Origin: Octopus bimaculoides
Taxonomy: Eukaryota
Direction: 5' to 3'
NCBI RefSeq assembly: GCF_001194135.2
Contig: NC_068981.1
Span: 190,787,555 to 190,851,554 of the forward strand
Length of the DNA stretch: 64,000 bases
This document shows positions 11,288 through 62,764 of the stretch, piece after piece. The notes under the pieces were generated by a model, which made no database searches, had not been told where the DNA came from, and saw only the letters and a program-made list of their open reading frames with translations. Within the stretch, counting starts at the first letter, position 1. Every line of letters starts with the position of its first letter. Position numbers and translations under genes: made by a program.

Positions 11288-11677
11288 TGTAACAATATAT
11301 ATATATACTGACACTAGTAAGGAACAATTATGAACTTTTATTTTAATTACATTTTTAAAAATATGTATTTTTGATAAGGTTTGTTTTTTTCAAGAAGCGA
11401 AGCATGTAAAATATCTCTGAGAAAATTAAAAATTANNNNNNNNNNNNNNNNNNNNNNNNNNNNNNNNNNNNNNNNNNNNNNNNNNNNNNNNNNNNNNNNN
11501 NNNNNNNNNNNNNNNNNNNNNNNNNNNNNNNNNNNNNNNNNNNNNNNNNNNNNNNNNNNNNNNNNNNNNNNNNNNNNNNNNNNNNNNNNNNNNNNNNNNN
11601 NNNNNNNNNNNNNNNNNNNNNNNNNNNNNNNNNATAATTGTTCCTTACTAGTGTCAGTATATATATATATTGTTACA
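11288..11677. repeat. 44-bp perfect inverted repeat (11288-11331 and 11634-11677) flanking an assembly gap
   Basis: TGTAACAATATATATATATACTGACACTAGTAAGGAACAATTAT and its exact reverse complement. Confidence 0.9.
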
Positions 11678-11734: not shown

Positions 11735-12582
11735 GTTGAAAAGGAACACACAAGTTGGTATGTATAAGGAAAATAAGACAAGGTAGAAAATGCTGAAATA
11801 ATTTTTTCATAAAGAATATTTTAGTACCAATTTCAGTCTTTGCGACTTTTTCAACTTAGAGTAAAGCATGAAAAACAATTAAATTGTGGAAAAATTAAAT
11901 TAAATGTTTTTTTAAAAATATTTCCATGGTTTTCAAATGCAAGGGACATGATATATATATATATNNNNNNNNNNNNNNNNNNNNNNNNNNNNNNNNNNNN
12001 NNNNNNNNNNNNNNNNNNNNNNNNNNNNNNNNNNNNNNNNNNNNNNNNNNNNNNNNNNNNNNNNNNNNNNNNNNNNNNNNNNNNNNNNNNNNNNNNNNNN
12101 NNNNNNNNNNNNNNNNNNNNNNNNNNNNNNNNNNNNNNNNNNNNNNNNNNNNNNNNNNNNNNNNNNNNNNNNNNNNNNNNNNNNNNNNNNNNNNNNNNNN
12201 NNNNNNNNNNNNNNNNNNNNNNNNNNNNNNNNNNNNNNNNNNNNNNNNNNNNNNNNNNNNNNNNNNNNNNNNNNNNNNNNNNNNNNNNNNNNNNNNNNNN
12301 NNNNNNNNNNNNNNNNNNNNNAAGAGATTGCAAGAGTGCAATGAAATAATTTAACAAAAAACTATATAAATTAATAAAGGACTGAACCAGTGCGTGTGTT
12401 TATTACCGGCATAATGCCTCTCCCAAGGTTTAATTGTATTTCTTTCAACACACGTATCCACATCAAGAATCTTGCACACGAAATACACATACGAAATATA
12501 TATATATATATATATATATATTTATGTATATATTATTTTTATGCTGCATGTTGATTAATGTTTATTTATTCTTTATTTCTAG

Positions 12583-14847: not shown

Positions 14848-15329
14848 TATATTGTTGAGTTGTTCCTACCTTTGAAAGTGTTCCATTTGTCATTTCATGC
14901 AGCTCCATCACATTCCAAGTAATTCGACACTTTATGTTTAACTGCATGAATTCTTGATGTTCAACAGCTATGCTTTCCTAGAATGAATCTTTACCATCCA
15001 ATCGACCTTCTAGGAATGCTAAGACCATCTTATCTCATTTTCTGCTATATCATATCCATTTTATTCATCCATTTATATGACAGAACAGTGGAATTTGAGA
15101 GCAATTTAGCAGCAATTTCTAACAGGTTGATGCTTCTTTGTTGACTTGTGAAAATTGAAGTAGATGTGGATAAATTTAAGATCTTTCAATGGTGATTTAT
15201 TACAGAAAATGAAAAATAGTTGCTATGCCATTGTGTTTGATATCAGAATGTCGTTTGTAAAACACTCACTCACTCCAAGTGAGTAACAAAATACATACTA
15301 GCCAGAAAAGAAATGACTTCCATTTTCTT

Positions 15330-15690
15330 TTGTAAATATCCATTCATCCATCCATACATACATTTTCTTTGTCCACTATTTCTGAGAAATTTGTTGGGTA
15401 GAGTCCTGTAGCACATCCTCCATAGGGTTCTACCAGAAGCAACTGTCATTACACTTTCTGACTGGAATCCTAAGCATAGCCAACAGAGATGATGGACATT
15501 ATCTAACCATTTTATTCTTGGTCTACCCCTAAGTTTCCTGCTAGTTGGCTTGGTATGAAGAATCTGTCTTGTGACTTTTTCCTGCAACATTCTAACCTTA
15601 TGTCTGTAGTACCAGAGTTGGGACTTCTCAATGCAGAGAAGTAGCAATTTGATTTGGAAAGACTCACTGATCTTCAAGTTATACTCCTTG
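15330..15690 (-). mobile_element. RTE-clade LINE 3' fragment
   Basis: KSQLWYYRHKVRMLQEKVTRQILHTKPTSRKLRGRPRIKWLDNV..VASGRTLWR matches the RTE ORF C-terminus (GHVxRM..RGRPRxRWxD..A.DR..WR). Confidence 0.85.
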
Positions 15691-16319
15691 TTGAATAATG
15701 TTACTCTAGAGATAATTTACAATCCATACCAAACATAAAAGGAGGGGGCGGAATGACAATGAAAAATGTAGAAAATAAAGACTTCAATCTTATTAAGTCT
15801 TTTAAGACTTTGTTAAATTACCTTCTGAGAATTTTTTTTTTTTTTTTGAAACATATGAGATTTTCATTGCTAATAATGGTTCAGAATATCTGTGATGGGA
15901 TACCAAAATATGTTATTAACCGAGATATTAAATCTAGTATTGGCTTGGTTGATGTCACAATTCTACTATAAATCTATTGTTACAGTAGTAAAATCTTATT
16001 AATAGATCTATTTAAAGATAGAATAGAATAAATTTATTGATTGACACTAATAAATTCTTTAACAGATCATTTTGGAATTGAAAATTGACTGGATATTGAT
16101 TTCTTGTTTAAATAGAAAACACATTTTTTTTTTTTAATTTGGAAAAGGAAAAGACATAGAGTCATATTACTGGTACAGATTTAATGACCCAGAAAGATTT
16201 CTATCGAGTCTGGCTGTTTACAGTAGACACCGATACAACTAATCTAATGTATACTTTAATTTAGAGCTAGCCCATTCATATTTGTTAGAATTGTCAATAT
16301 GATAAATAGAATAATATAT

Positions 16320-26470: not shown

Positions 26471-26761
26471 CCCATTACCTCCCATAATTCTATTAACTGG
26501 AATTTTTTTTATGAAACTTTGATTTCTAGCATAAAACAGCCTTAGAAACATGCTGGAATGATCAAAATAACATTTCAAAATAACATTCTAAATAGAAATA
26601 AGCGAGATATTGGGTGAAAAATTAGCAAACCTCATTTGAATATCAAAGAAATATACCTAGCAGATATAGCAAAAAGGTTAGATATGTGTAAATATTGACA
26701 GATAATTACGAAATTTGTAATTTTTAAGTGATCTCATATGAGATCACTGGTAGGTAATGGG
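26471..26761. mobile_element. piggyBac-type MITE
   Basis: TIRs CCCATTACCTCCCA / TGGTAGGTAATGGG; flanks TTTA and TTAA. Confidence 0.75.
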
Positions 26762-26834: not shown

Positions 26835-27136
26835 TGATTAATATCTGACAAAACAATCATGGGAAGAGAATAAGTCAAATATGGTCCTTTCATGTGCAAT
26901 ATGGTAATTTAAGAGATAGAACCAAAAAAATGAACATCAGAAACATTAATCATTTTATATAAGCAATGTGCTAATATTTGTATGGTCATGTAATATGAGG
27001 TGAGGGAATAAACATCATTTAACATCTACCGTTATGTATTATCCTTTCAAGTACTTCCAGTGATTTATTTTCAGACATGTATTCCATTATTTCACACTTG
27101 TTCTCTACTTCACTATTTCCTTTACATCCAGACACA
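26835..27136 (+). repeat. Left arm of a ~300-bp near-perfect inverted repeat (non-SINE sequence)
   Basis: Reverse complement of 29326-29625 by manual alignment: 61 perfect bp, a ~30-bp patch with 6 substitutions and a 2-nt gap, then 211 perfect bp. Confidence 0.97.
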
Positions 27137-27329
27137 CCAAGAGACAGGAGTACCAGCTTTCAAAGCTTTAGCTGATTATATCAATACCATTTATTAGACT
27201 GGTTCTTGTGCCTTGTTTCTTTTACAATACTTTCTGTGAAGTGCATATTGGCACAAAAGATAATAGCCCAGTTGTAGTTGAAATCCTGTTTGATTGCAGT
27301 GATTTTCACTTCATACTGATATAACTGGC

Positions 27330-27630
27330 ATCAGTTGGTTATGACGATAAGGGTTCTAGATGATCTGATCAACGGAAGATGCTTGCTTGAAGGATTAATA
27401 TGTGCAAGTGGCTGAACACTCCACAGACACATGCACCCTTAACATAGTTCTCAGAGAGGTTCAGCATGACATAGGATCTGACAAGGCTGGTACAACTCAT
27501 TTTTGCCAGCTGAGTAGATTGGAGCAATAAAGTGAAATAAAGTGATTTGCTCAAGGACACAAGGCACCACCTGGAATCGAACTCATGACCTTATGATTGT
27601 GAGCCAAATATCTTAACCCCGTCACTTACT
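27330..27630 (-). mobile_element. tRNA-headed SINE with a Ceph-SINE-like central domain (also ~57795-58130 and 10335-10470 on -, 18990-19290 on +)
   Basis: GGGTTC.AG.TGATC.GATCAACGGAA..GC.TGCT.G.GA..TTAA..TG.AAGTGGCTGA.CACTCCACAGACAC plus a reversed tRNA-like B box GGAATCGAACTC. Confidence 0.7.
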
Positions 27631-27684
27631 CTCATATAAAGACAGATACATGTATATACACACACAGATTGATTTTTTTGTATA

Positions 27685-27935
27685 CAGTAATCCCTCAACT
27701 GTCGCTGGTGTTACATTCAAAACCCCACCCCCCACAGTAGGTGAAAATTTGCGAAGTAGAAACAGGACTGCACTGCATATTTTTGTTATTATTTTTATAA
27801 TTTGTATATATTTTTTTATCATAAATGCAAAACAACACCATGGAGTAATCAACATAAGTTTAAATAATAAACCGTGATAGATGAACCGCATTAGGTGAAC
27901 CACGATAGGTGAACTGTGATATGGTGAACTGTGAT
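27685..27935 (+). mobile_element. Tigger/pogo-like MITE with the right end missing
   Basis: TA|CAGTAATCCCTC.. left TIR and subterminal GAACCGCG-like repeats. Confidence 0.6.
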
Positions 27936-29084
27936 ATTGTTCAGTCCAAATCTATGGTAGAAGTGATTTGTCATAAGCGCCACCTGGTAAACTAAAACCT
28001 GGAACCTTGTGCTTACAAAGTGACATTAGCTAATAGCAATGCTTGTATCATCCTACAGCAATCCCAGCGTTCTGAAATTTATCATTCCCAATGTTTCTAT
28101 CACATGATAAACATAGAATGCAGACATTGCTGTTAATTAAGTCATTCACTTTTTGAGCTCATAATTCCAATTGTAGCCCACCAGGTGGTGCTTCAACGAA
28201 TCTCTTTTACCATAACTCTGAATTGATTAATGCCTCGTAAATGAATTTGGTATAGAAACTGTGGGAGCTCTCTCTCTCTCTTTCTCTGATGTGCATGTGT
28301 AGGTGTGTGTATGTATGTGCATGTGTGGGTGTGTGATCATCATCATCATCCTTCAGTGTCCATATTTCATGCTGGTGTTGGTTGAAAAAGCTTGACAGGA
28401 TCCAGCAGGTGAGAGGACTGTGCCAAACTTCATCGTTTCTTTTGATATGGCTTCTATAGCTGGATGCACTTCCTGATGCCAACCACTTTACGGAGTGTAT
28501 GTATATATCTTTGTGTAATTTTTTTTTATATCAATGAAAACCAGTACATTCAAGCAAGTTTATGGCACGCTTGCGAAGAAGTCCCATCAAGCCAAGCAAA
28601 ATCATAGTCATGACAGATAGCGGTGTCACGTAAATGGTACCCATACCAGTGGCATGTAAAAGCATCCATTACACTCTCAGAGTGGTTGGCGTTAGGAAGG
28701 GCATCCAGCCATAGAAAACCATGCCAAATCAGAGTGAATTCTGGCATAGCCTTCCAGTGTGCCAGCCCAGTCAAACTGTCCAACCCATGCCAGCATGGAC
28801 AACAGACGTTAAATGATGATGATGAACAGAGTTACCTTCCATTATACCAATATCCACTTTGCAGAATGTATTTTAAGAGAAAAGTACCATAAGAACCACA
28901 CTAACAACTAGTGTTGATATGATCTGCTGAAATTGTTAAAGGTGGTACTTTAGTATTGCTACAATCCAGTGACAAGTACAATAAAATGTAGAAAACAAGA
29001 TAATTAAAAAACATAAAGGAAAACACAAATAAAACAGTGAAACCTTGAGTATTACAAGAGTATCAGAGAAATAATGATGTTCAA

Positions 29085-29301
29085 CCCTTTAGCATTTAAA
29101 CTAGCAATATCGAGCTTGGAATATTTTACCTGTTTTATGCTTATGTTCAAACTGACCAGAACTGACTTCTTACACCTAGCCTGCAATGTGATTCCTACTA
29201 TAAACAACCACATCTTCTAAATCGAGAAGCTACAAGATGAGTTTTAAAAAGTGTAAATAAATAAACTTTACATTCGACAAAGTATTATGAATGCCAAACG
29301 G
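29085..29301. mobile_element. Decayed piggyBac-type MITE (related copy in the opposite orientation at ~31420-31635)
   Basis: TCAA|CCCTTTAGCATT ... AATGCCAAACGG|TTCA; degenerate TIRs and TTAA TSD. Confidence 0.65.
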
Positions 29302-29325
29302 TTCAGTAATCTCAGTAGTTTTTGA

Positions 29326-29625
29326 TGTGTCTGGATGTAAAGGAAATAGTGAAGTAGAGAACAAGTGTGAAATAATGGAATACATGTCTGAAAATAAATC
29401 ACTGGAAGTACTTGAAAGGATAATACATAACGGTAGATGTTAAATGATGTTTATTCCCTCACCTCATATTACATGACCATACAAATATTAGCACATTGCT
29501 TATATAAAATGATTAATGTTTCTGATGTTCATTTTTCGCTCTATCCCTTAAATTACCATACTTTACATGAAAGGACCATATTTGACTTATTCTCTTCCCA
29601 TGATTGTTTTGTCAGATATTAATCA
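29326..29625 (-). repeat. Right arm of the ~300-bp near-perfect inverted repeat
   Basis: Reverse complement of 26835-27136, checked block by block. Confidence 0.97.
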
Positions 29626-30409
29626 CATCAGTAGAGATTGTTGTTACTGCTCTAAAACCCCATTATTCTGCCATTAGCAAAATAAATTATTGTTGTTTAA
29701 TTTTCACGAGTTTTCCTAAAAATATCTAGCTTGTATTGTTTGATAGTTATGATCCAAATTCAGTTTTGTTATTATTTTGCAAAATGTATTTTTAAAGAAA
29801 AAAAACTATCAGTTACAAATGCTAAAAGTACATAAAATATATTCTTATATAGATAAATGATGTATTTTTGATTCCAGTCTGCCTGGATCTACTTTTATAA
29901 AAGTTTTTGAGTTTTTTTTTTTTCTTTTTACTTACTGATAATGATGATATGTGTACGTATATATGTAGAGTATGAATGAAAAATTCTCATCTAATGACAT
30001 GATGTAGGTATGTACTATAAGTGCTTAGTTTAGTTTACCACTAAAACTCCAACTGAAAAAGAGGTGGTGTTGAAGTTGCCTATGAAATATGGCTAGAAGT
30101 GGTTCATCATTGAGTGGGTAGCTATATTCTAGAAATAGAGACTGAACAAGCAAAATATGTGGTCTCACTTCAGAGCATTTAATTTCTAATTAAAGTATTT
30201 AATTTACACATAGGACAGAGTAGTTATAACAAATATGGAATTATGAAGTAATGTGTAAGTATGTATGTGTGTGTGTGTGTGTGTGTGTGTTTAAGTCACA
30301 ATATATGGATTCAAATAATCCAGTAGTACTCATAAAAAAAAGTTCCTTAATGTATCATTCTACAAAACATATAGAATATATAGTAATGATGAAGGCAGCT
30401 GTGTAAAGA

Positions 30410-30989
30410 AGTGCCAGTCTCTAACTGTGGAGGGAGCCTGTGGTAGCAATAGACCCAGGAAGACATGGGACAAGGTGGTGAAGCATGATCTTTGAACTTT
30501 GGGCCTCACAGAGGCAATGACTAATGACCGAGACCTTTGGTAATATGCTGTGCTTGAGAAGACCCATCAAGCCAAGTAAAATCATAGTTTTGGTTGATGC
30601 TGGTGTCACATTACTGGCACCTGTGCCAGTGGCATGTGAAAAGCTCCTTTCAAGCATTGGGCCTCACAGAGGCAAAGTGGCTGAGCTCCTTTCCAGTGTT
30701 TGGCCTCACGGAGGCAATGACGGAAACCTTTGGCATTACATCATGCTTGAAAAAAAGACCCATCAAGCCAAGTAAAGTCACACTCATAGGAGGTACCAGT
30801 GTCACATAAATAGCACCTATGCCAGTGGCACATAAAAACACCCATTACACTCCCGGAGTGGTTGGCATTAGGAAGGGCATCCAGCCATAGAAACCATGCC
30901 AAACCTGACTGAAGTCTTGGTGCAGCCTTTCAGCTTACCAGCCCTGGTCAAACCATCCAACCCATGCCAGCATGGACAACAGACTTTAA

Positions 30990-31413: not shown

Positions 31414-32114
31414 AGTTCATATTTAATCCTCAAAGATGTAATGCTCATTTATTCACATCAATTTTTGAATTCATCATGCATTATCTTGTAGCTTTGAGAT
31501 TTCAATGATGTGATTGTTTATTTTTAGAATGACGTTATAGGATAGGTGTGAGAGGCTGAATCTGGCTGGTTTGAATATAAAACTGTTTGATTATTTAGGC
31601 CACACATGGCTGGTTTGAGTTCCAAAGAGTTAAGTAGTAGTTTTATGTCAGAATCTATTCCAAACACTGAGTTAATAAACCAATTAATGATTAAATTATT
31701 TTACTGAATCCCTCCAAATTCTTCATTATTTTCAAGATTAATTAAAGCTTAAAATAATGTACTTTGTTACAAATATAATCATTGACAGGTTAAAGAGAAA
31801 AAATTTTAACCATTTTTATTGTTGTTGCAGCATTGATTAACCTCAGCTATTCAACTAGTTTAGCAGGCCTATGTTCAAAAGTATTCCAGCCATGACCATC
31901 CCATCTTTTACTTAGAAACAATGCATTCAGGACCTTATTGTTGAATGTCTTTTATTTTTTAAGATAGTGTGATCTGTGGGAGATTTGGTTACTATTTCTC
32001 ACAGGTCAAATAACTGCCTATTGTCTCTCTTGGAACTGTTGTTAAGGTTATTAAGTGATGAAAAACAATAGATAGAAAGATTAAAGGGTTTATCAGTAGA
32101 TTAAAATTATATGA

Positions 32115-36015: not shown

Positions 36016-36076
36016 TGATGCCCAAATTTGTAATATTTGAAAACGATCACTGATGGCGGAAGTTCTGTGCTAAACT

Positions 36077-36487
36077 ATACTTATTGTCTGGGATGAATGC
36101 ACGATGGCACACTGTGGTGCACTAGAAGCCCAAGATAGGTCACTAAGGTATATTAGAGACAGTACTGCCATTATGGGGTGGGGGCTTAACTGTTGTCCTC
36201 AGTCAAATATTACCAGTCATACCATGGGGTATGTGAGCTGATGGCATCTATGTGTGTCTGAAGTTTTCACCTCTGTAGAGGTTTGTTCACCAGCTTTCAT
36301 TAAGCAACAATATGTGAGCTCATCTCTACAACAACCCCCTAGCTGAGGAATTCTTTCATCAACTTCTACTAATTGGAAATGACACCTTACCATTGAATAA
36401 CACCCTGCAACAACATGTACTGCAATGTGGGCACATGGTGTCTACATTGGTCGAGCTTGAAGAAAAGGTATTTCTCACATTGCAATC
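36077..36487 (+). pseudogene. Helitron PIF1-family helicase fragment with in-frame stops
   Basis: Translates to ILIVWDECTMAHCGALEAQDRSLRYIR..MGWGLTVVLSQILPVIPWGM*ADGIYVCLKFSPL*RFV..NNM*AHL..FFHQLLLIGN, i.e. Walker B DECTM plus the QILPVIP and NMR motifs. Confidence 0.9.
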
Positions 36488-45948: not shown

Positions 45949-46617
45949 NNNNNNNNNNNNNNNNNNNNNNNNNNNNNNNNNNNNNNNNNNNNNNNNNNNN
46001 NNNNNNNNNNNNNNNNNNNNNNNNNNNNNNNNNNNNNNNNNNNNNNNNNNNNNNNNNNNNNNNNNNNNNNNNNNNNNNNNNNNNNNNNNNNNNNNNNNNN
46101 NNNNNNNNNNNNNNNNNNNNNNNNNNNNNNNNNNNNNNNNNNNNNNNNNNNNNNNNNNNNNNNNNNNNNNNNNNNNNNNNNNNNNNNNNNNNNNNNNNNN
46201 NNNNNNNNNNNNNNNNNNNNNNNNNNNNNNNNNNNNNNNNNNNNNNNNNNNNNNNNNNNNNNNNNNNNNNNNNNNNNNNNNNNNNNNNNNNNNNNNNNNN
46301 NNNNNNNNNNNNNNNNNNNNNNNNNNNNNNNNNNNNNNNNNNNNNNNNNNNNNNNNNNNNNNNNNNNNNNNNNNNNNNNNNNNNNNNNNNNNNNNNNNNN
46401 NNNNNNNNNNNNNNNNNNNNNNNNNNNNNNNNNNNNNNNNNNNNNNNNNNNNNNNNNNNNNNNNNNNNNNNNNNNNNNNNNNNNNNNNNNNNNNNNNNNN
46501 NNNNNNNNNNNNNNNNNNNNNNNNNNNNNNNNNNNNNNNNNNNNNNNNNNNNNNNNNNNNNNNNNNNNNNNNNNNNNNNNNNNNNNNNNNNNNNNNNNNN
46601 NNNNNNNNNNNNNNNNN
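45949..46617. other. Assembly gap (others at 1322-1528, 3405-3546, 8133-8456, 11436-11633 and 11965-12321)
   Basis: N runs. Confidence 1.
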
Positions 46618-58715: not shown

Positions 58716-59100
58716 GCAGCTTCCAATTATGATCCAGCAGTTCATTATGTAGATGACACGAGTTTCCATTGGTGCAATGACAACTGAGTGTGTACATTGT
58801 AAAGCCAGGAAGTGGCCTAGTGAGACACCTGCACTGTGCTGCAGTGGTGGAAAGGTTAAACTTCCTGCAATCTCCCAACCTCCAGAACTATTGAAGAAAT
58901 TGTTGTCATCAACTGGTCCAGATTCCAAGCACTTCCAAAGCAAAATTAGACAATACAATGCTGCACTACAGATGACATCATCTGGAGCCACAAGAGATTT
59001 AACTGAGCCAGGATTCATGCAGACTTTCAAGATCCAAGGTCAGATATATCATCAGATTTGCTCTCTACTACCTCTGTCAAATGAATCACCAAAATTGGCC
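58716..59100 (+). pseudogene. Helitron RepHel N-terminal (Zn-finger-like / helicase-N) fragment, frameshifted
   Basis: AASNYDPAVHY, then a frameshift into IGAMTTECVHCKARKWPSETPALCCSGGKVKLP..SKHFQSKIRQYNAALQMTSSGA..FKIQGQIYHQICSLLP, which matches the characteristic Helitron motifs CxxC..CCxxGKV and IRxYNxAFQMTS..FKIQGQxYH. Confidence 0.92.
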
Positions 59101-59209
59101 CTTCATTGTTTATAATTTGTACCTGTTCTACAGTTACAAAATAAGCTACACAAAACATGTTTTTGAATTACGTGTATTTACTTTATATACATATATGAGT
59201 TGGGAACTT

Positions 59210-61400: not shown

Positions 61401-62764
61401 TTATTATTTATTCAAGGCACTACTCAGAATTGAACTTACAATCTTGGGGTAAGTAGCCCATGCTCTTAACCATTATGCTATATGTAATTATAGAGGGAAC
61501 TATAGAGTGAATTATAGAGTGAATATAGAGTGAATTTTAGGGGCTTATAAACCTAATATTTTTGTATCCTTCATTAATACCAGTTCCCATATTCAACTCA
61601 TATCTGCACTAGGTCTGTTTAGGAGGTTATTGTGTCCTAGCATATGTGCTGCCTCTTTTAGTTTTCATATTTGCCAGTGGTGTTCTCTGTCCATTATTTT
61701 AACTTCTTCCCACAGGGGAAGGTGGTCTCTGCTTTTCCATACATGATCAGCTATACCTGATTTTTCAAAATCTCGTGTCACAGCTTTACGATGTTCATGT
61801 TCCTCTACCCTTGTTTTGAGTGGGCAGCATGTTTCACTAGGGTTGGGTTCAAAATTCTACCAGGACACCTGGAGAGCAGATCAGCTGAAACCTTTCAGTT
61901 TCCGTCTACCAAATCTACTCACAAGGCTTTGGTCAGCCCGAGGCGATAGTAGAAGACACTCGCCCAAGGTGCCACGCAGTGGGACTCAACCCGGAACCAT
62001 GAGGTTCGTAAGCAACCTACTTACCACACAGCCACTTGCTCAATAAAACATTAAGTTAGAAGTATGTAGAATGTTTAAACGTGTGGTGATAATTTAGATA
62101 ATTACATCATGTCCAAAGGTAGTTATTGCTAGTCAACCACTCTTACCATCCTGAGAAAGGCTCATTGATAAGTATGGTTGACCCCACACACACATATACA
62201 CATGCATATGCGCACACACACACACATCTTTTCATAAGTCATAAAGAGCTATTGTATAATTTATTGTTAATTCTTCAAACCTTCTCAATCTTACATGGTT
62301 AAGAAGTTCACTTCACAATTCCAGTGTTTTGGGTTCAATATCACCGTGCAGCTCTCAAAGCCAGGGAGCACAATTTGGTAAGCAGCAAATGTATGGAAAA
62401 CCATCAGGGGAAACCACCTGTGTTCTTGGGTATTGGAATTAATCTGTTACCTGGATTAACACTGCCACCAACACCTGGTCCTTCAGGTACTTTACTGTAA
62501 TCTCTTTCAAGCATTCATGTGAGGTCTCCAGTCTGGGGATAACATGATTCCACCAGCCTCAGAACCTTTGCAAAGAATCATGGGTACTGTTCCTCTTCCT
62601 CTGAATTAGCCATTAAAAATGAAGAAATCCAAGAGCAACAAACCATGTGATTATGAGAGCAGATATGTAATTTAGTAGACATCATATTACATGGTTGAGT
62701 AACCTCACAGATAGCATTAAATGAAATGATGCAGACTCACTTGTAACCTTTCAATCTGAGGTAA

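What the first reader, a model, noticed from the sequence alone, without database searches (positions are those of the whole stretch)
26835..29625. Ancient 2.8-kb palindrome whose outer ~300 bp have been homogenised to near identity
Seen: 26835-27136 is the reverse complement of 29326-29625 (61 perfect bp, a 30-bp patch at about 73%, then 211 perfect bp). Inside, the symmetry continues to a centre near 28085 at only ~65-70%. Each arm carries its own old TE insertions: SINE and Tigger on the left; two SINEs and a decayed piggyBac MITE on the right. There is no TSD at the outer ends, which argues against a simple long-TIR transposon. Inference: an old inverted duplication in which discrete tracts are kept identical by arm-to-arm gene conversion and/or selection for a ~300-bp RNA duplex. 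The diverged patch left between two perfect tracts is what patchy conversion predicts. If intronic, it would be a very long, non-SINE dsRNA of the kind that drives ADAR hyper-editing, endo-siRNA production or back-splicing. Cephalopods are known for extensive A-to-I editing.
Basis: partly seen in the sequence, partly recalled or inferred. Interest (0 to 1): 0.78.

Follow-up and report, generated by a model that had tools for sequence, protein, structure and literature searches.

The report
Old inverted duplication with homogenised outer ends
A roughly 2.8-kb stretch of repeat-rich non-coding DNA is an old, decayed inverted duplication whose outermost 300 bp are still almost identical, most likely because the two arms copy from each other; the pattern is tidy, but it is an example of a known process and no function is shown.

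Summary
26835-27136 is the reverse complement of 29326-29625: 61 perfect bp, a 30/28-bp patch at 73%, then 211 perfect bp. It is the only repeat pair of at least 100 bp and at least 95% identity in the window.

The inner symmetry is also real, but only in blocks. After the arm-specific insertions are removed, colinear blocks at 71-72% identity (K2P 0.37) lead to a 69-bp spacer centred at 28083. The innermost block is a SINE copy present in both arms. The two copies share 21-27 private changes, so ordinary DNA was duplicated in inverted orientation; this was not a transposon with its own terminal repeats.

The identical tract fills the one homology block that nothing interrupts. It is bounded outside by the end of the duplication and inside by a 372-bp right-arm-only block.

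Best reading (0.55): arm-to-arm gene conversion persists in the outer block, while the fragmented inner blocks escaped and diverged.

Not tested: selection for an RNA duplex, ADAR editing or siRNA roles, genome-wide copy number, orthologues and read support. No sequence from this organism was reachable. "No TSD" is not secure, because a palindromic TTAA or TA lies at both ends.

Verdict: a new member of a known kind, of low to moderate interest.

The parts
26835..27140 (.). Left outer arm (block A). Perfect tracts at 26835-26895 and 26926-27136, with the diverged patch 26896-26925 between them.
   Evidence: Unique in the window apart from its partner. 30% GC. No long ORF. No structure of its own (z = 0.57).
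29322..29625 (.). Right outer arm (block A'). Perfect tracts at 29326-29536 and 29565-29625, with the patch 29537-29564 between them.
   Evidence: Folded together as RNA, the two arms give -489 kcal/mol; in a fold of the whole 2.8 kb, 297 of 306 arm positions pair with the other arm.
26896..26925 (.). Diverged patch, left version (the right version is 29537-29564). 6 substitutions (5 of them transitions) plus a 2-bp indel; 73% identity.
   Evidence: The transition:transversion ratio does not differ from that of the old blocks (Fisher P = 0.40). Neither version has a third copy in the window.
27149..27273 (.). Old block B, left; partner 28825-28949.
   Evidence: 71.2% identity over 125 bp without gaps, K2P 0.371, z = 22.6. 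No other copy in the window.
28825..28949 (.). Old block B, right.
27282..27315 (.). Old block C, left; partner 28529-28561. It becomes colinear once the SINE at 28562-28825 is removed.
   Evidence: 25 of 33 positions identical, z = 3.8 within a small search space. Weak on its own; supported mainly by its position.
27319..27620 (-). Left-arm-only SINE ('SINE-C', with a tRNA-like head at the right end).
   Evidence: 5-6 related copies in the window at 70-79% identity. Absent from the right arm.
27640..27677 (-). (CA)n tail and adjoining part of the left copy of the duplicated SINE ('SINE-B').
   Evidence: alignment. It mirrors the (TG)n tail at 28290-28335 (inverted pair I6).
27678..27935 (+). 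Left-arm-only insertion. It has a Tigger/pogo-like terminus (TA-CAGTAATCCCTC...) and a 14-bp tandem repeat, and it interrupts the left SINE-B copy, replacing about 45 bp of it.
   Evidence: The family assignment is by eye only.
27936..28048 (-). Old block E, left: the body and head of the left SINE-B copy.
   Evidence: K2P 0.366 to its partner, z = 18.3. It belongs to a SINE family with about 20 copies in the window. It shares 21 private changes with the right copy in 97 columns, against 5.3 expected.
28049..28117 (.). Spacer of the old palindrome (69 bp); centre of symmetry at 28083.
28118..28335 (+). Right SINE-B copy: block E' at 28118-28231, continuing to its (TG)n tail at 28290-28335.
28336..28499 (-). 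Right-arm-only, 5'-truncated copy of the high-copy SINE ('SINE-A'), very diverged.
   Evidence: K2P 0.48 from the consensus built from window copies.
28562..28825 (+). Right-arm-only SINE-A copy with an (ATG)n tail. It splits old blocks B and C.
   Evidence: (K2P 0.11 from the consensus), so it is younger than the duplication.
28950..29321 (.). Right-arm-only 372-bp block; the left arm has 8 bp here (27141-27148). This heterology marks the inner limit of the identical tract.
   Evidence: no match to the left arm, z = 0. The junction was read directly.
29085..29301 (.). piggyBac-like MITE inside the 372-bp block. Its ends are CCCTTTAGCATT... and ...AATGCCAAACGG, flanked by TCAA and TTCA (decayed TTAA).
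   Evidence: a related copy at 31416-31659, 64% identity. The ends were read.

Best explanation
A stretch of ordinary non-coding DNA about 650-700 bp long, already containing an old SINE copy, was duplicated in inverted orientation around a 69-bp spacer. Later, each arm took up its own insertions. The left arm gained a SINE and a Tigger-like piece. The right arm gained two SINEs and a 372-bp block that includes a MITE.

These insertions cut the inner homology into short pieces of about 33-180 bp. Those pieces stopped exchanging sequence and drifted apart to K2P 0.37.

The outermost 306 bp stayed as one uninterrupted homology block and went on undergoing intrachromosomal, arm-to-arm gene conversion. 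It is therefore still identical, apart from a 30-bp island that has escaped conversion.

What is shown:
- the anatomy;
- the equal divergence of the inner blocks;
- the co-duplication of the SINE;
- the match between the limits of the identical tract and the limits of uninterrupted homology.

What is inferred:
- that the mechanism is homologous gene conversion;
- that conversion has been recurrent;
- that the insertions caused the inner blocks to escape.

No function is implied. If transcribed on one RNA, the arms would form a duplex of about 300 bp, but that would be a by-product.
For: - Exact mosaic of 61 and 211 perfect bp around a 73% patch.
- The adjacent colinear blocks B and E have nearly the same K2P, 0.371 and 0.366. 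Both are highly significant against shuffles, so they date from a single old duplication event.
- The two central SINE copies share 27 of 170 (whole alignment) and 21 of 97 (core) private derived states, against 8.5 and 5.3 expected. No other copy in the window carries more than 6 of them.
- All remaining interior sequence is arm-specific and is made of recognisable repeat families.
- The identical tract ends within 4 bp of the 372-bp heterology on the inside and at the end of all homology on the outside.
- About 88 differences are expected in 306 bp at the old divergence; 7 are seen, all inside the patch or at the last 4 bp.
- Divergence in the patch equals the old divergence.
- Established knowledge, not tested here: homologous exchange needs a minimum length of uninterrupted identity and is suppressed by mismatches, so duplicates can 'escape' conversion segment by segment (Walsh 1987; Teshima and Innan 2004).
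- Primate palindromes keep arms above 99% identity by conversion, and their rearrangements cluster around the centre of symmetry (PMC8327919).
Against: - There is no outgroup, orthologue or population data, so concerted evolution is not demonstrated.
- If conversion has been recurrent for a long time, a 30-bp island at the full old divergence in the middle of the converted block is awkward. It fits one or two recent events with patchy repair better. Yet a first-time exchange between arms only about 71% identical is itself mechanistically unlikely.
- The converted block shows no GC enrichment (30% GC, the same as the flanks), so there is no trace of GC-biased conversion.
- The window is a short-read scaffold with six N gaps. 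Isolated differences inside the 211-bp tract could have been collapsed by the assembler.
- Genome-wide copy number of the arm is unknown.
Confidence: 0.55

Rival explanations
1. A single recent non-homologous copying event. A replication template switch or break-induced repair across the old hairpin-prone palindrome rewrote the outer part of one arm from the other. This would be quasipalindrome 'correction' on a large scale or a secondary inverted duplication, with no history of recurrent conversion.
For: - It explains zero differences in 272 bp without needing homologous invasion between arms 71% identical.
- It explains why an island at the full old divergence survives.
- No GC-bias signature.
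- The sharp inner boundary lies at a structural breakpoint.
Against: - Known template-switch corrections are usually tens of bases and short-range (own knowledge). Here two tracts totalling 272 bp lie 2.2 kb apart.
- Two separate tracts need two switches or a patchy intermediate.
- The tract limits coincide with the limits of uninterrupted homology, which homology-dependent exchange predicts and a random switch does not.
Confidence: 0.13
2. The whole 2.8 kb is one copy of a non-autonomous DNA transposon with long terminal inverted repeats (foldback-like or long-TIR, possibly inserted at TTAA or TA). The identical ends reflect the family's requirements or a young insertion, not exchange at this locus.
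For: - The repeat ends abruptly, with no flanking homology.
- Both ends contain a palindromic TTAA/ATTAAT/TA that could hide a target-site duplication.
- The reconstructed ancestor is a compact hairpin of about 1.3 kb with a 69-bp loop.
Against: - There is no second copy of any unique part in 64 kb.
- There is no transposase or any protein match for the arms.
- The end sequence does not resemble piggyBac or Tc1/mariner termini (own knowledge).
- The arms carry a co-duplicated, already old SINE, as ordinary DNA would.
- Selection on termini cannot keep 272 bp identical while adjacent parts of the same arms reach K2P 0.37.
- The interior holds SINE insertions with K2P 0.11-0.48 from consensus, which is hard to reconcile with a young copy.
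Confidence: 0.12
3. Assembly artefact. Either the near-identity is exaggerated because the assembler or gap-closer collapsed two similar arms into one consensus, or the second arm is a misplaced inverted copy.
For: - The window is a draft scaffold with six N gaps.
- The 211-bp tract may exceed the read length of such an assembly.
- Elsewhere in the window a 44-bp perfect inverted copy sits exactly at a gap edge.
Against: - There are no gaps within 14 kb of the feature.
- Each arm is joined to unique sequence on both sides.
- The right arm lies exactly where the old, diverged symmetry predicts an arm.
- The patch shows that the assembler could tell the arms apart.
- Arms only 70-90% identical would not collapse in a k-mer assembly (own knowledge), so at most a few isolated differences could be hidden.
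Confidence: 0.12
4. The duplex is functional. The outer arms are kept complementary by selection because a transcript through them forms a hairpin of about 300 bp used as an endo-siRNA precursor, an ADAR target or sponge, or as intronic complements that promote back-splicing.
For: - If transcribed, the arms pair almost completely (-489 kcal/mol; 297 of 306 positions).
- Hyper-editing is reported to be very high in Octopus and to track near-perfect inverted repeats (PMC5625713).
Against: - There is no evidence of transcription, gene context, promoter, small RNAs or editing.
- No Rfam match.
- Perfect identity gives no compensatory changes to test.
- Selection for pairing would tolerate G:U and scattered mismatches, so it does not predict 100% identity, whereas copying does.
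- The inner blocks show no sign of maintained pairing.
- Such repeats are common in that genome, so most are expected to be neutral.
Confidence: 0.05

Closest known systems
Sex-chromosome palindromes with arm-to-arm gene conversion (human Y P1-P8; primate X palindromes)
   Same: Inverted duplication around a spacer. Arm identity is far higher than the age of the structure allows. Structural change is concentrated towards the centre of symmetry while the outer parts stay alike (PMC8327919; PMC3723533 and PMC8600007, listed).
   Different: - Those arms are 8 kb to more than 1 Mb long and above 99% identical along their whole length. They carry testis-expressed genes, are argued to be preserved by selection, and show GC-biased conversion.
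- Here the homogenised part is 306 bp of AT-rich non-coding DNA, the rest of each arm has escaped to about 71% identity, there is no gene and no GC bias, and chromosomal location is unknown.
Escape from concerted evolution in duplicated sequences (sequence-dependent gene conversion; Walsh 1987; Teshima and Innan 2004 - cited from own knowledge)
   Same: A sharp mosaic of identical and strongly diverged segments within one pair of paralogues. The boundaries lie at interruptions of homology.
   Different: The theory and its examples mostly concern duplicated genes in direct or inverted orientation. Here the sequence is a small non-coding palindrome, and the causal role of the insertions is inferred, not shown.
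Inverted SINE/Alu pairs and palindromic repeats as ADAR hyper-editing substrates (for example the palindromic Harbinger repeat of Xenopus; PMC5625713)
   Same: The arms would form a long, nearly perfect intramolecular dsRNA if co-transcribed. The arm length (about 300 bp) is like that of an Alu pair.
   Different: The arms are not copies of a dispersed repeat family. They are a locus-specific duplication with a 2.2-kb loop. No editing or expression data exist for it.
Drosophila hairpin-RNA (hpRNA) genes that give endo-siRNAs (own knowledge)
   Same: A locus-specific inverted duplication with arms a few hundred bp long and a loop.
   Different: hpRNA arms are homologous to a target gene and are transcribed from a defined unit. 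No target homology, transcript or small RNAs are known here.
Foldback and long-TIR DNA transposons (FB, Galileo; own knowledge)
   Same: Long, near-identical terminal inverted repeats around a degenerate interior. Exchange between the two TIRs has been proposed for Galileo.
   Different: There is no family, no transposase and no clear target-site duplication, and the arms are not built of tandem subrepeats. The arms contain a co-duplicated older SINE.

Membership tests
Palindrome with arm-to-arm gene conversion | Two arms in inverted orientation around a spacer, derived from one duplication | tested here: met
   Colinear blocks A, B, (C) and E around the spacer 28049-28117. K2P is equal in blocks B and E. 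The SINE copies in the two arms share private changes.
Palindrome with arm-to-arm gene conversion | Arm-to-arm identity well above what the age of the duplication predicts | tested here: met
   Met for the outer 306 bp only: 272 of 272 identical in two tracts, against 71-72% in adjacent blocks. P = 7e-32 for the 211-bp tract.
Palindrome with arm-to-arm gene conversion | Concerted evolution: arms more alike within a species than orthologous arms are between species, or paralogous variants seen to convert in populations | not testable with these tools
   No sequence of this organism or its relatives was found in any searchable collection.
Palindrome with arm-to-arm gene conversion | GC-biased conversion signature | tested here: not met
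   Block A is 30.4% GC, against 28-30% in the flanks and 34-38% in the old blocks. This feature is frequent but not defining.
Large sex-chromosome ampliconic palindromes (narrow sense) | Arms of at least 8 kb, above 99% identity along their length, carrying protein-coding genes | tested here: not met
   The homogenised part is 306 bp. There is no ORF above 61 codons in the arms, and no protein homologue.
Long-TIR / foldback DNA transposon or MITE | Target-site duplication flanking the terminal inverted repeats | tested here: inconclusive
   Only a 2-bp direct repeat (CA) lies outside the repeat. A palindromic TTAA, ATTAAT or TA lies within its first 9 bp and could be a hidden duplication.
Long-TIR / foldback DNA transposon or MITE | Multiple dispersed copies sharing the termini | tested here: inconclusive
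   No other copy in the 64-kb window. The genome is not available.
Long-TIR / foldback DNA transposon or MITE | Termini or coding capacity related to a known superfamily; foldback arms built of subrepeats | tested here: not met
   No transposase ORF or Pfam hit. No tandem subrepeats in the arms. The arms include an older co-duplicated SINE.
Hairpin-RNA / ADAR-substrate locus | Long near-perfect intramolecular duplex if transcribed | tested here: met
   Folding the two arms together gives -489 kcal/mol. 297 of 306 arm positions pair with the other arm in a fold of the whole 2.8 kb.
Hairpin-RNA / ADAR-substrate locus | Both arms on one transcript; clusters of A-to-G changes, 21-22-nt small RNAs or back-splice junctions | not testable with these tools
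   No expression data. No Rfam family. No recognisable exon in the window: Pfam scan of 10 ORFs and ORF screen.
Assembly artefact (false or collapsed inverted duplication) | Lies next to gaps or contig joins; not anchored in unique sequence | tested here: not met
   The nearest N gaps are 11965-12321 and 45949-46617. Each arm is flanked by unique sequence on both sides, and the right arm sits at the position predicted by the old symmetry.
Assembly artefact (false or collapsed inverted duplication) | Not reproduced by spanning reads; doubled read depth | not testable with these tools
   No reads or independent assembly are available.

The most novel reading that the evidence does not exclude
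The 306-bp duplex is a conserved hairpin-RNA element: an endo-siRNA precursor, a dedicated ADAR substrate, or intronic complements that drive back-splicing. Its two arms would have evolved in concert across octopod species for tens of millions of years while the rest of the palindrome decayed. Conversion would then be the means by which selection keeps the stem perfect.
Probability: 0.05. Interest if true: 0.6.

Novelty: new member of a known kind. Interest (0 to 1): 0.25.

Why it matters
As it stands, this is a clean small-scale example of partial concerted evolution. One 306-bp block of an old palindrome stays identical, while the neighbouring blocks, cut up by transposon insertions, have diverged to about 71%.

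If orthologous loci confirm the history, the locus would give a natural estimate of how much uninterrupted homology an animal genome needs to keep converting. It would also show how insertions let duplicates escape conversion. The calibration reported for Octopus vulgaris is about 0.0036 substitutions per site per million years (PMC13282606). If that rate applies to this organism, which was not verified, the dates are roughly as follows:
- the duplication is about 50 million years old;
- the youngest nested SINE is about 30 million years old;
- the last homogenisation was less than about 1.5 million years ago.

The duplication would then pre-date the reported 13-33-million-year split of O. vulgaris and O. 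bimaculoides, so a test across species is feasible.

As a source of dsRNA the locus is one of many in a genome reported to be rich in near-perfect inverted repeats. It has no special claim to function.

Tried and rejected
- Independent or orthologous copies could not be reached by any route tried:
  - Exact look-ups of 12 window ORFs in the protein and contig collections found nothing.
  - A composite of the arm's open frames found no homologous protein.
  - A 22-mer from the arm was absent from the metagenome and viral contigs.
  - As a control, the 24-mer core of the window's most abundant SINE was also absent from the metagenome contigs. That collection therefore shows no trace of this organism, and the negative result for the arm says nothing about copy number.
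- The taxon could not be confirmed. A composite of transposon-protein remnants found only five Helitron-like proteins, at 43-58% identity. SINE core strings occur in no searchable paper. The cephalopod assignment rests on my recognising the SINE sequences from memory, which is a lead rather than a test.
- No gene context was found. There are no Rfam or tRNA hits, no Pfam hit for 10 ORFs, and an ORF screen of the unmasked sequence showed only transposon-like remnants.
- I first took the central palindrome 27936-28231 for a MITE. It is instead two head-to-head copies of a SINE family. Independent insertion of the two copies is rejected by their shared private changes.
- Two independent insertions of a young element forming the outer arms is rejected: the arm continues directly into old colinear homology.
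- The symmetry does not continue beyond the arms. The best alignment of the 500-bp flanks is not significant (z = 2.0).
- The A-to-G excess in the patch is not significant.
- Foldback-type subrepeats are absent from the arms.
Full report
**1. The observation**

26835-26895 is the perfect reverse complement of 29565-29625 (61 bp). 26926-27136 is the perfect reverse complement of 29326-29536 (211 bp). Between them, 26896-26925 and 29537-29564 differ by six substitutions and a 2-bp indel, giving 73% identity. After one more mismatch and three matching bases, homology stops at 27140/29322.

The arm occurs nowhere else in the window. In a comparison of the whole 64 kb with itself, this is the only pair of at least 100 bp with at least 95% identity. 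Every other repeat pair, mostly SINEs, is at most 91% identical.

**2. The inner symmetry**

The symmetry inside the arms is real but comes in blocks. A sensitive self-comparison, dinucleotide-shuffle controls and explicit alignments give these colinear blocks:
- B: 27149-27273 against 28949-28825, 71.2% identity over 125 ungapped bp, K2P 0.371, z = 22.6.
- C: 27282-27315 against 28561-28529, 33 bp, weak.
- E: 27936-28048 against 28231-28118, K2P 0.366, z = 18.3.

All other interior sequence is specific to one arm and shows no symmetry (z between 0 and 1.4). The strong self-palindrome at 28340-28825 is off the main anti-diagonal. It consists of two copies of the window's most abundant SINE, tail-outward, both in the right arm.

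**3. What the pieces are**

- Left arm only:
  - a tRNA-derived SINE at 27319-27620;
  - a 258-bp piece at 27678-27935 with a Tigger/pogo-like terminus and a 14-bp tandem repeat (assigned by eye).
- Right arm only:
  - a very old truncated SINE-A copy at 28336-28499;
  - a SINE-A copy at 28562-28825, with K2P 0.11 from the consensus of the window's copies;
  - a 372-bp block at 28950-29321. It contains a piggyBac-like MITE at 29085-29301 with matching ends and decayed TTAA flanks, and a related copy lies at 31416-31659.
- Both arms: block E and the microsatellites beside it are two copies of a third SINE family, which has about 20 copies in the window. The two copies lie head to head, one in each arm.

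**4. One duplication, not two insertions**

Measured against the family consensus, the two central SINE copies share 27 identical derived states in 170 columns, where 8.5 are expected. In the well-aligned core they share 21 in 97 columns, where 5.3 are expected (P = 6e-8). No other pair of copies in the window shares more than 6% of columns, and no other copy carries more than 6 of the 27 states.

The two copies therefore descend from a single insertion that was already old when it was duplicated together with its surroundings. Together with the equal K2P of blocks B and E, this shows a single segmental inverted duplication of about 650-700 bp of ordinary DNA around a short spacer. It argues against a transposon that carries its own terminal repeats.

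**5. The contrast that needs explaining**

At the divergence of the old blocks (p = 0.288), about 88 differences are expected in 306 bp. Seven are seen, all of them in the patch or in the last four bases. The probability of 211 consecutive identities is 7e-32. Sequence must therefore have been copied from one arm to the other long after the duplication.

The identical tract fills exactly the one homology block that no insertion interrupts. Its outer limit is the end of the duplication; there is no significant flank homology. Its inner limit is the junction with the 372-bp right-only block.

Homology-dependent gene conversion predicts this arrangement. Long uninterrupted identity keeps converting, whereas short, interrupted and progressively mismatched segments escape. 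That principle is established theory and experiment, cited from my own knowledge. The 30-bp patch has the old divergence, which fits an unconverted island.

I give this explanation 0.55. Its weak points are these:
- There is no outgroup.
- An old-looking island is odd under long-running conversion.
- There is no GC-bias signal: block A is 30% GC, like its flanks.
- The data come from a short-read draft.

**6. Rivals**

- **Single recent template-switch or repair event (0.13).** It explains the island and needs no invasion between diverged arms, but it does not predict that the tract limits should match the limits of homology.
- **Long-TIR or foldback-like transposon (0.12).** It cannot be excluded without the genome. 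Against it:
  - there is no second copy, no transposase and no subrepeats;
  - the arms carry a co-duplicated SINE;
  - selection on termini could not hold 272 bp identical next to K2P 0.37.
- **Assembly artefact (0.12).** The window has six N gaps, and one gap edge carries a 44-bp perfect inverted copy. However, the feature is more than 14 kb from any gap and is anchored in unique sequence on all four sides. The right arm also sits exactly where the diverged symmetry predicts it. At most a few isolated differences could have been collapsed.
- **Selection for a functional RNA duplex (0.05).** The arms would pair almost completely (-489 kcal/mol), but nothing else supports a function. A single arm has no structure of its own, there is no Rfam match, and no exon or gene was recognised in the window.

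**7. Context from the literature**

Porath et al. (PMC5625713) report that 0.44% of random 50-mers in Octopus bimaculoides have a reverse-oriented match above 95% identity within 2 kb. That figure is exceptionally high among the animals they surveyed, and hyper-editing tracks such structures. If the window is from an octopus, this locus is one of a large class of potential dsRNA sources and is not a singular one.

Primate X and Y palindromes (PMC8327919; others listed) are the closest described system. They show arm-to-arm conversion, with structural change concentrated around the centre of symmetry. They are 25 to more than 1000 times larger, carry genes, and are homogenised along their whole arms.

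A recent O. vulgaris repeat study equates Jukes-Cantor distances of 0.09 and 0.2 with 25 and 56 million years (PMC13282606). On that scale, and only if it applies to this organism:
- the duplication is about 50 million years old;
- the nested SINE-A copy is about 30 million years old;
- the last homogenisation was less than about 1.5 million years ago (95% bound from zero differences in 272 bp).

**8. Limits**

No DNA or protein from this organism could be reached in any collection. Genome-wide copy number, orthologous loci, read support, gene context, expression and even the taxon therefore remain untested. The cephalopod assignment rests on my recognising the SINE sequences from memory.

**9. 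Verdict**

The structural part of the interpretation (an old inverted duplication with homogenised ends) is supported and has been sharpened; the functional part is unsupported. This is a new member of a known kind: partial concerted evolution in a small non-coding palindrome. Interest is 0.25.

Noticed in passing
window 11288-11331 and 11634-11677 (N gap at 11436-11633): A 44-bp perfect inverted repeat whose right copy begins at the first base after an assembly gap. It is either a gap-edge artefact or the visible outer part of a second near-perfect palindrome whose inner part is hidden in the gap. Only 1 of the 12 gap edges shows this.
   Followed up: partly
window 26727-26748: A 22-bp perfect palindrome, AGTGATCTCATATGAGATCACT, lies 87 bp to the left of the left arm. 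Origin unknown.
   Followed up: no
window 27319-27677 and 28290-28499: Each arm independently acquired a different SINE directly next to the microsatellite tail of the co-duplicated SINE copy. This suggests the tail is a preferred insertion site.
   Followed up: no
window 26896-26925 / 29537-29564: Four of the six substitutions in the patch are A-to-G when read from the left arm to the reverse complement of the right arm. The transition excess is not significant against the old blocks (Fisher P = 0.40).
   Followed up: yes
window 58753-59112 (+), 36074-36238 (+), 15273-15716 (-), 30319-30492 (+), 61668-61856 (-): Remnants of transposon proteins. A composite query of the 58753-59112, 15273-15716 and 61668-61856 remnants found five proteins at 43-58% identity; the one hit carrying a Pfam domain has PF14214, which I take from memory to be the Helitron N-terminal domain. 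Which remnant each hit aligns to was not checked, so the Helitron label for 58753-59112 and the helicase-like, reverse-transcriptase C-terminus-like and GIY-YIG-like labels for the others all rest on recognition by eye.
   Followed up: partly
whole window: At least three SINE families account for dozens of copies in 64 kb. About 42% of the window matches another part of itself or is an N gap. No pair other than the palindrome arms exceeds 91% identity, so the repeat landscape here is uniformly old.
   Followed up: partly
window 28084-28105 (inside the spacer): A short imperfect hairpin, TGTTTCTATCA / TGATAAACA, lies off-centre in the 69-bp spacer. It could be a relic of the short inverted repeat that seeded the original fold-back duplication, or it could be chance.
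   Followed up: no
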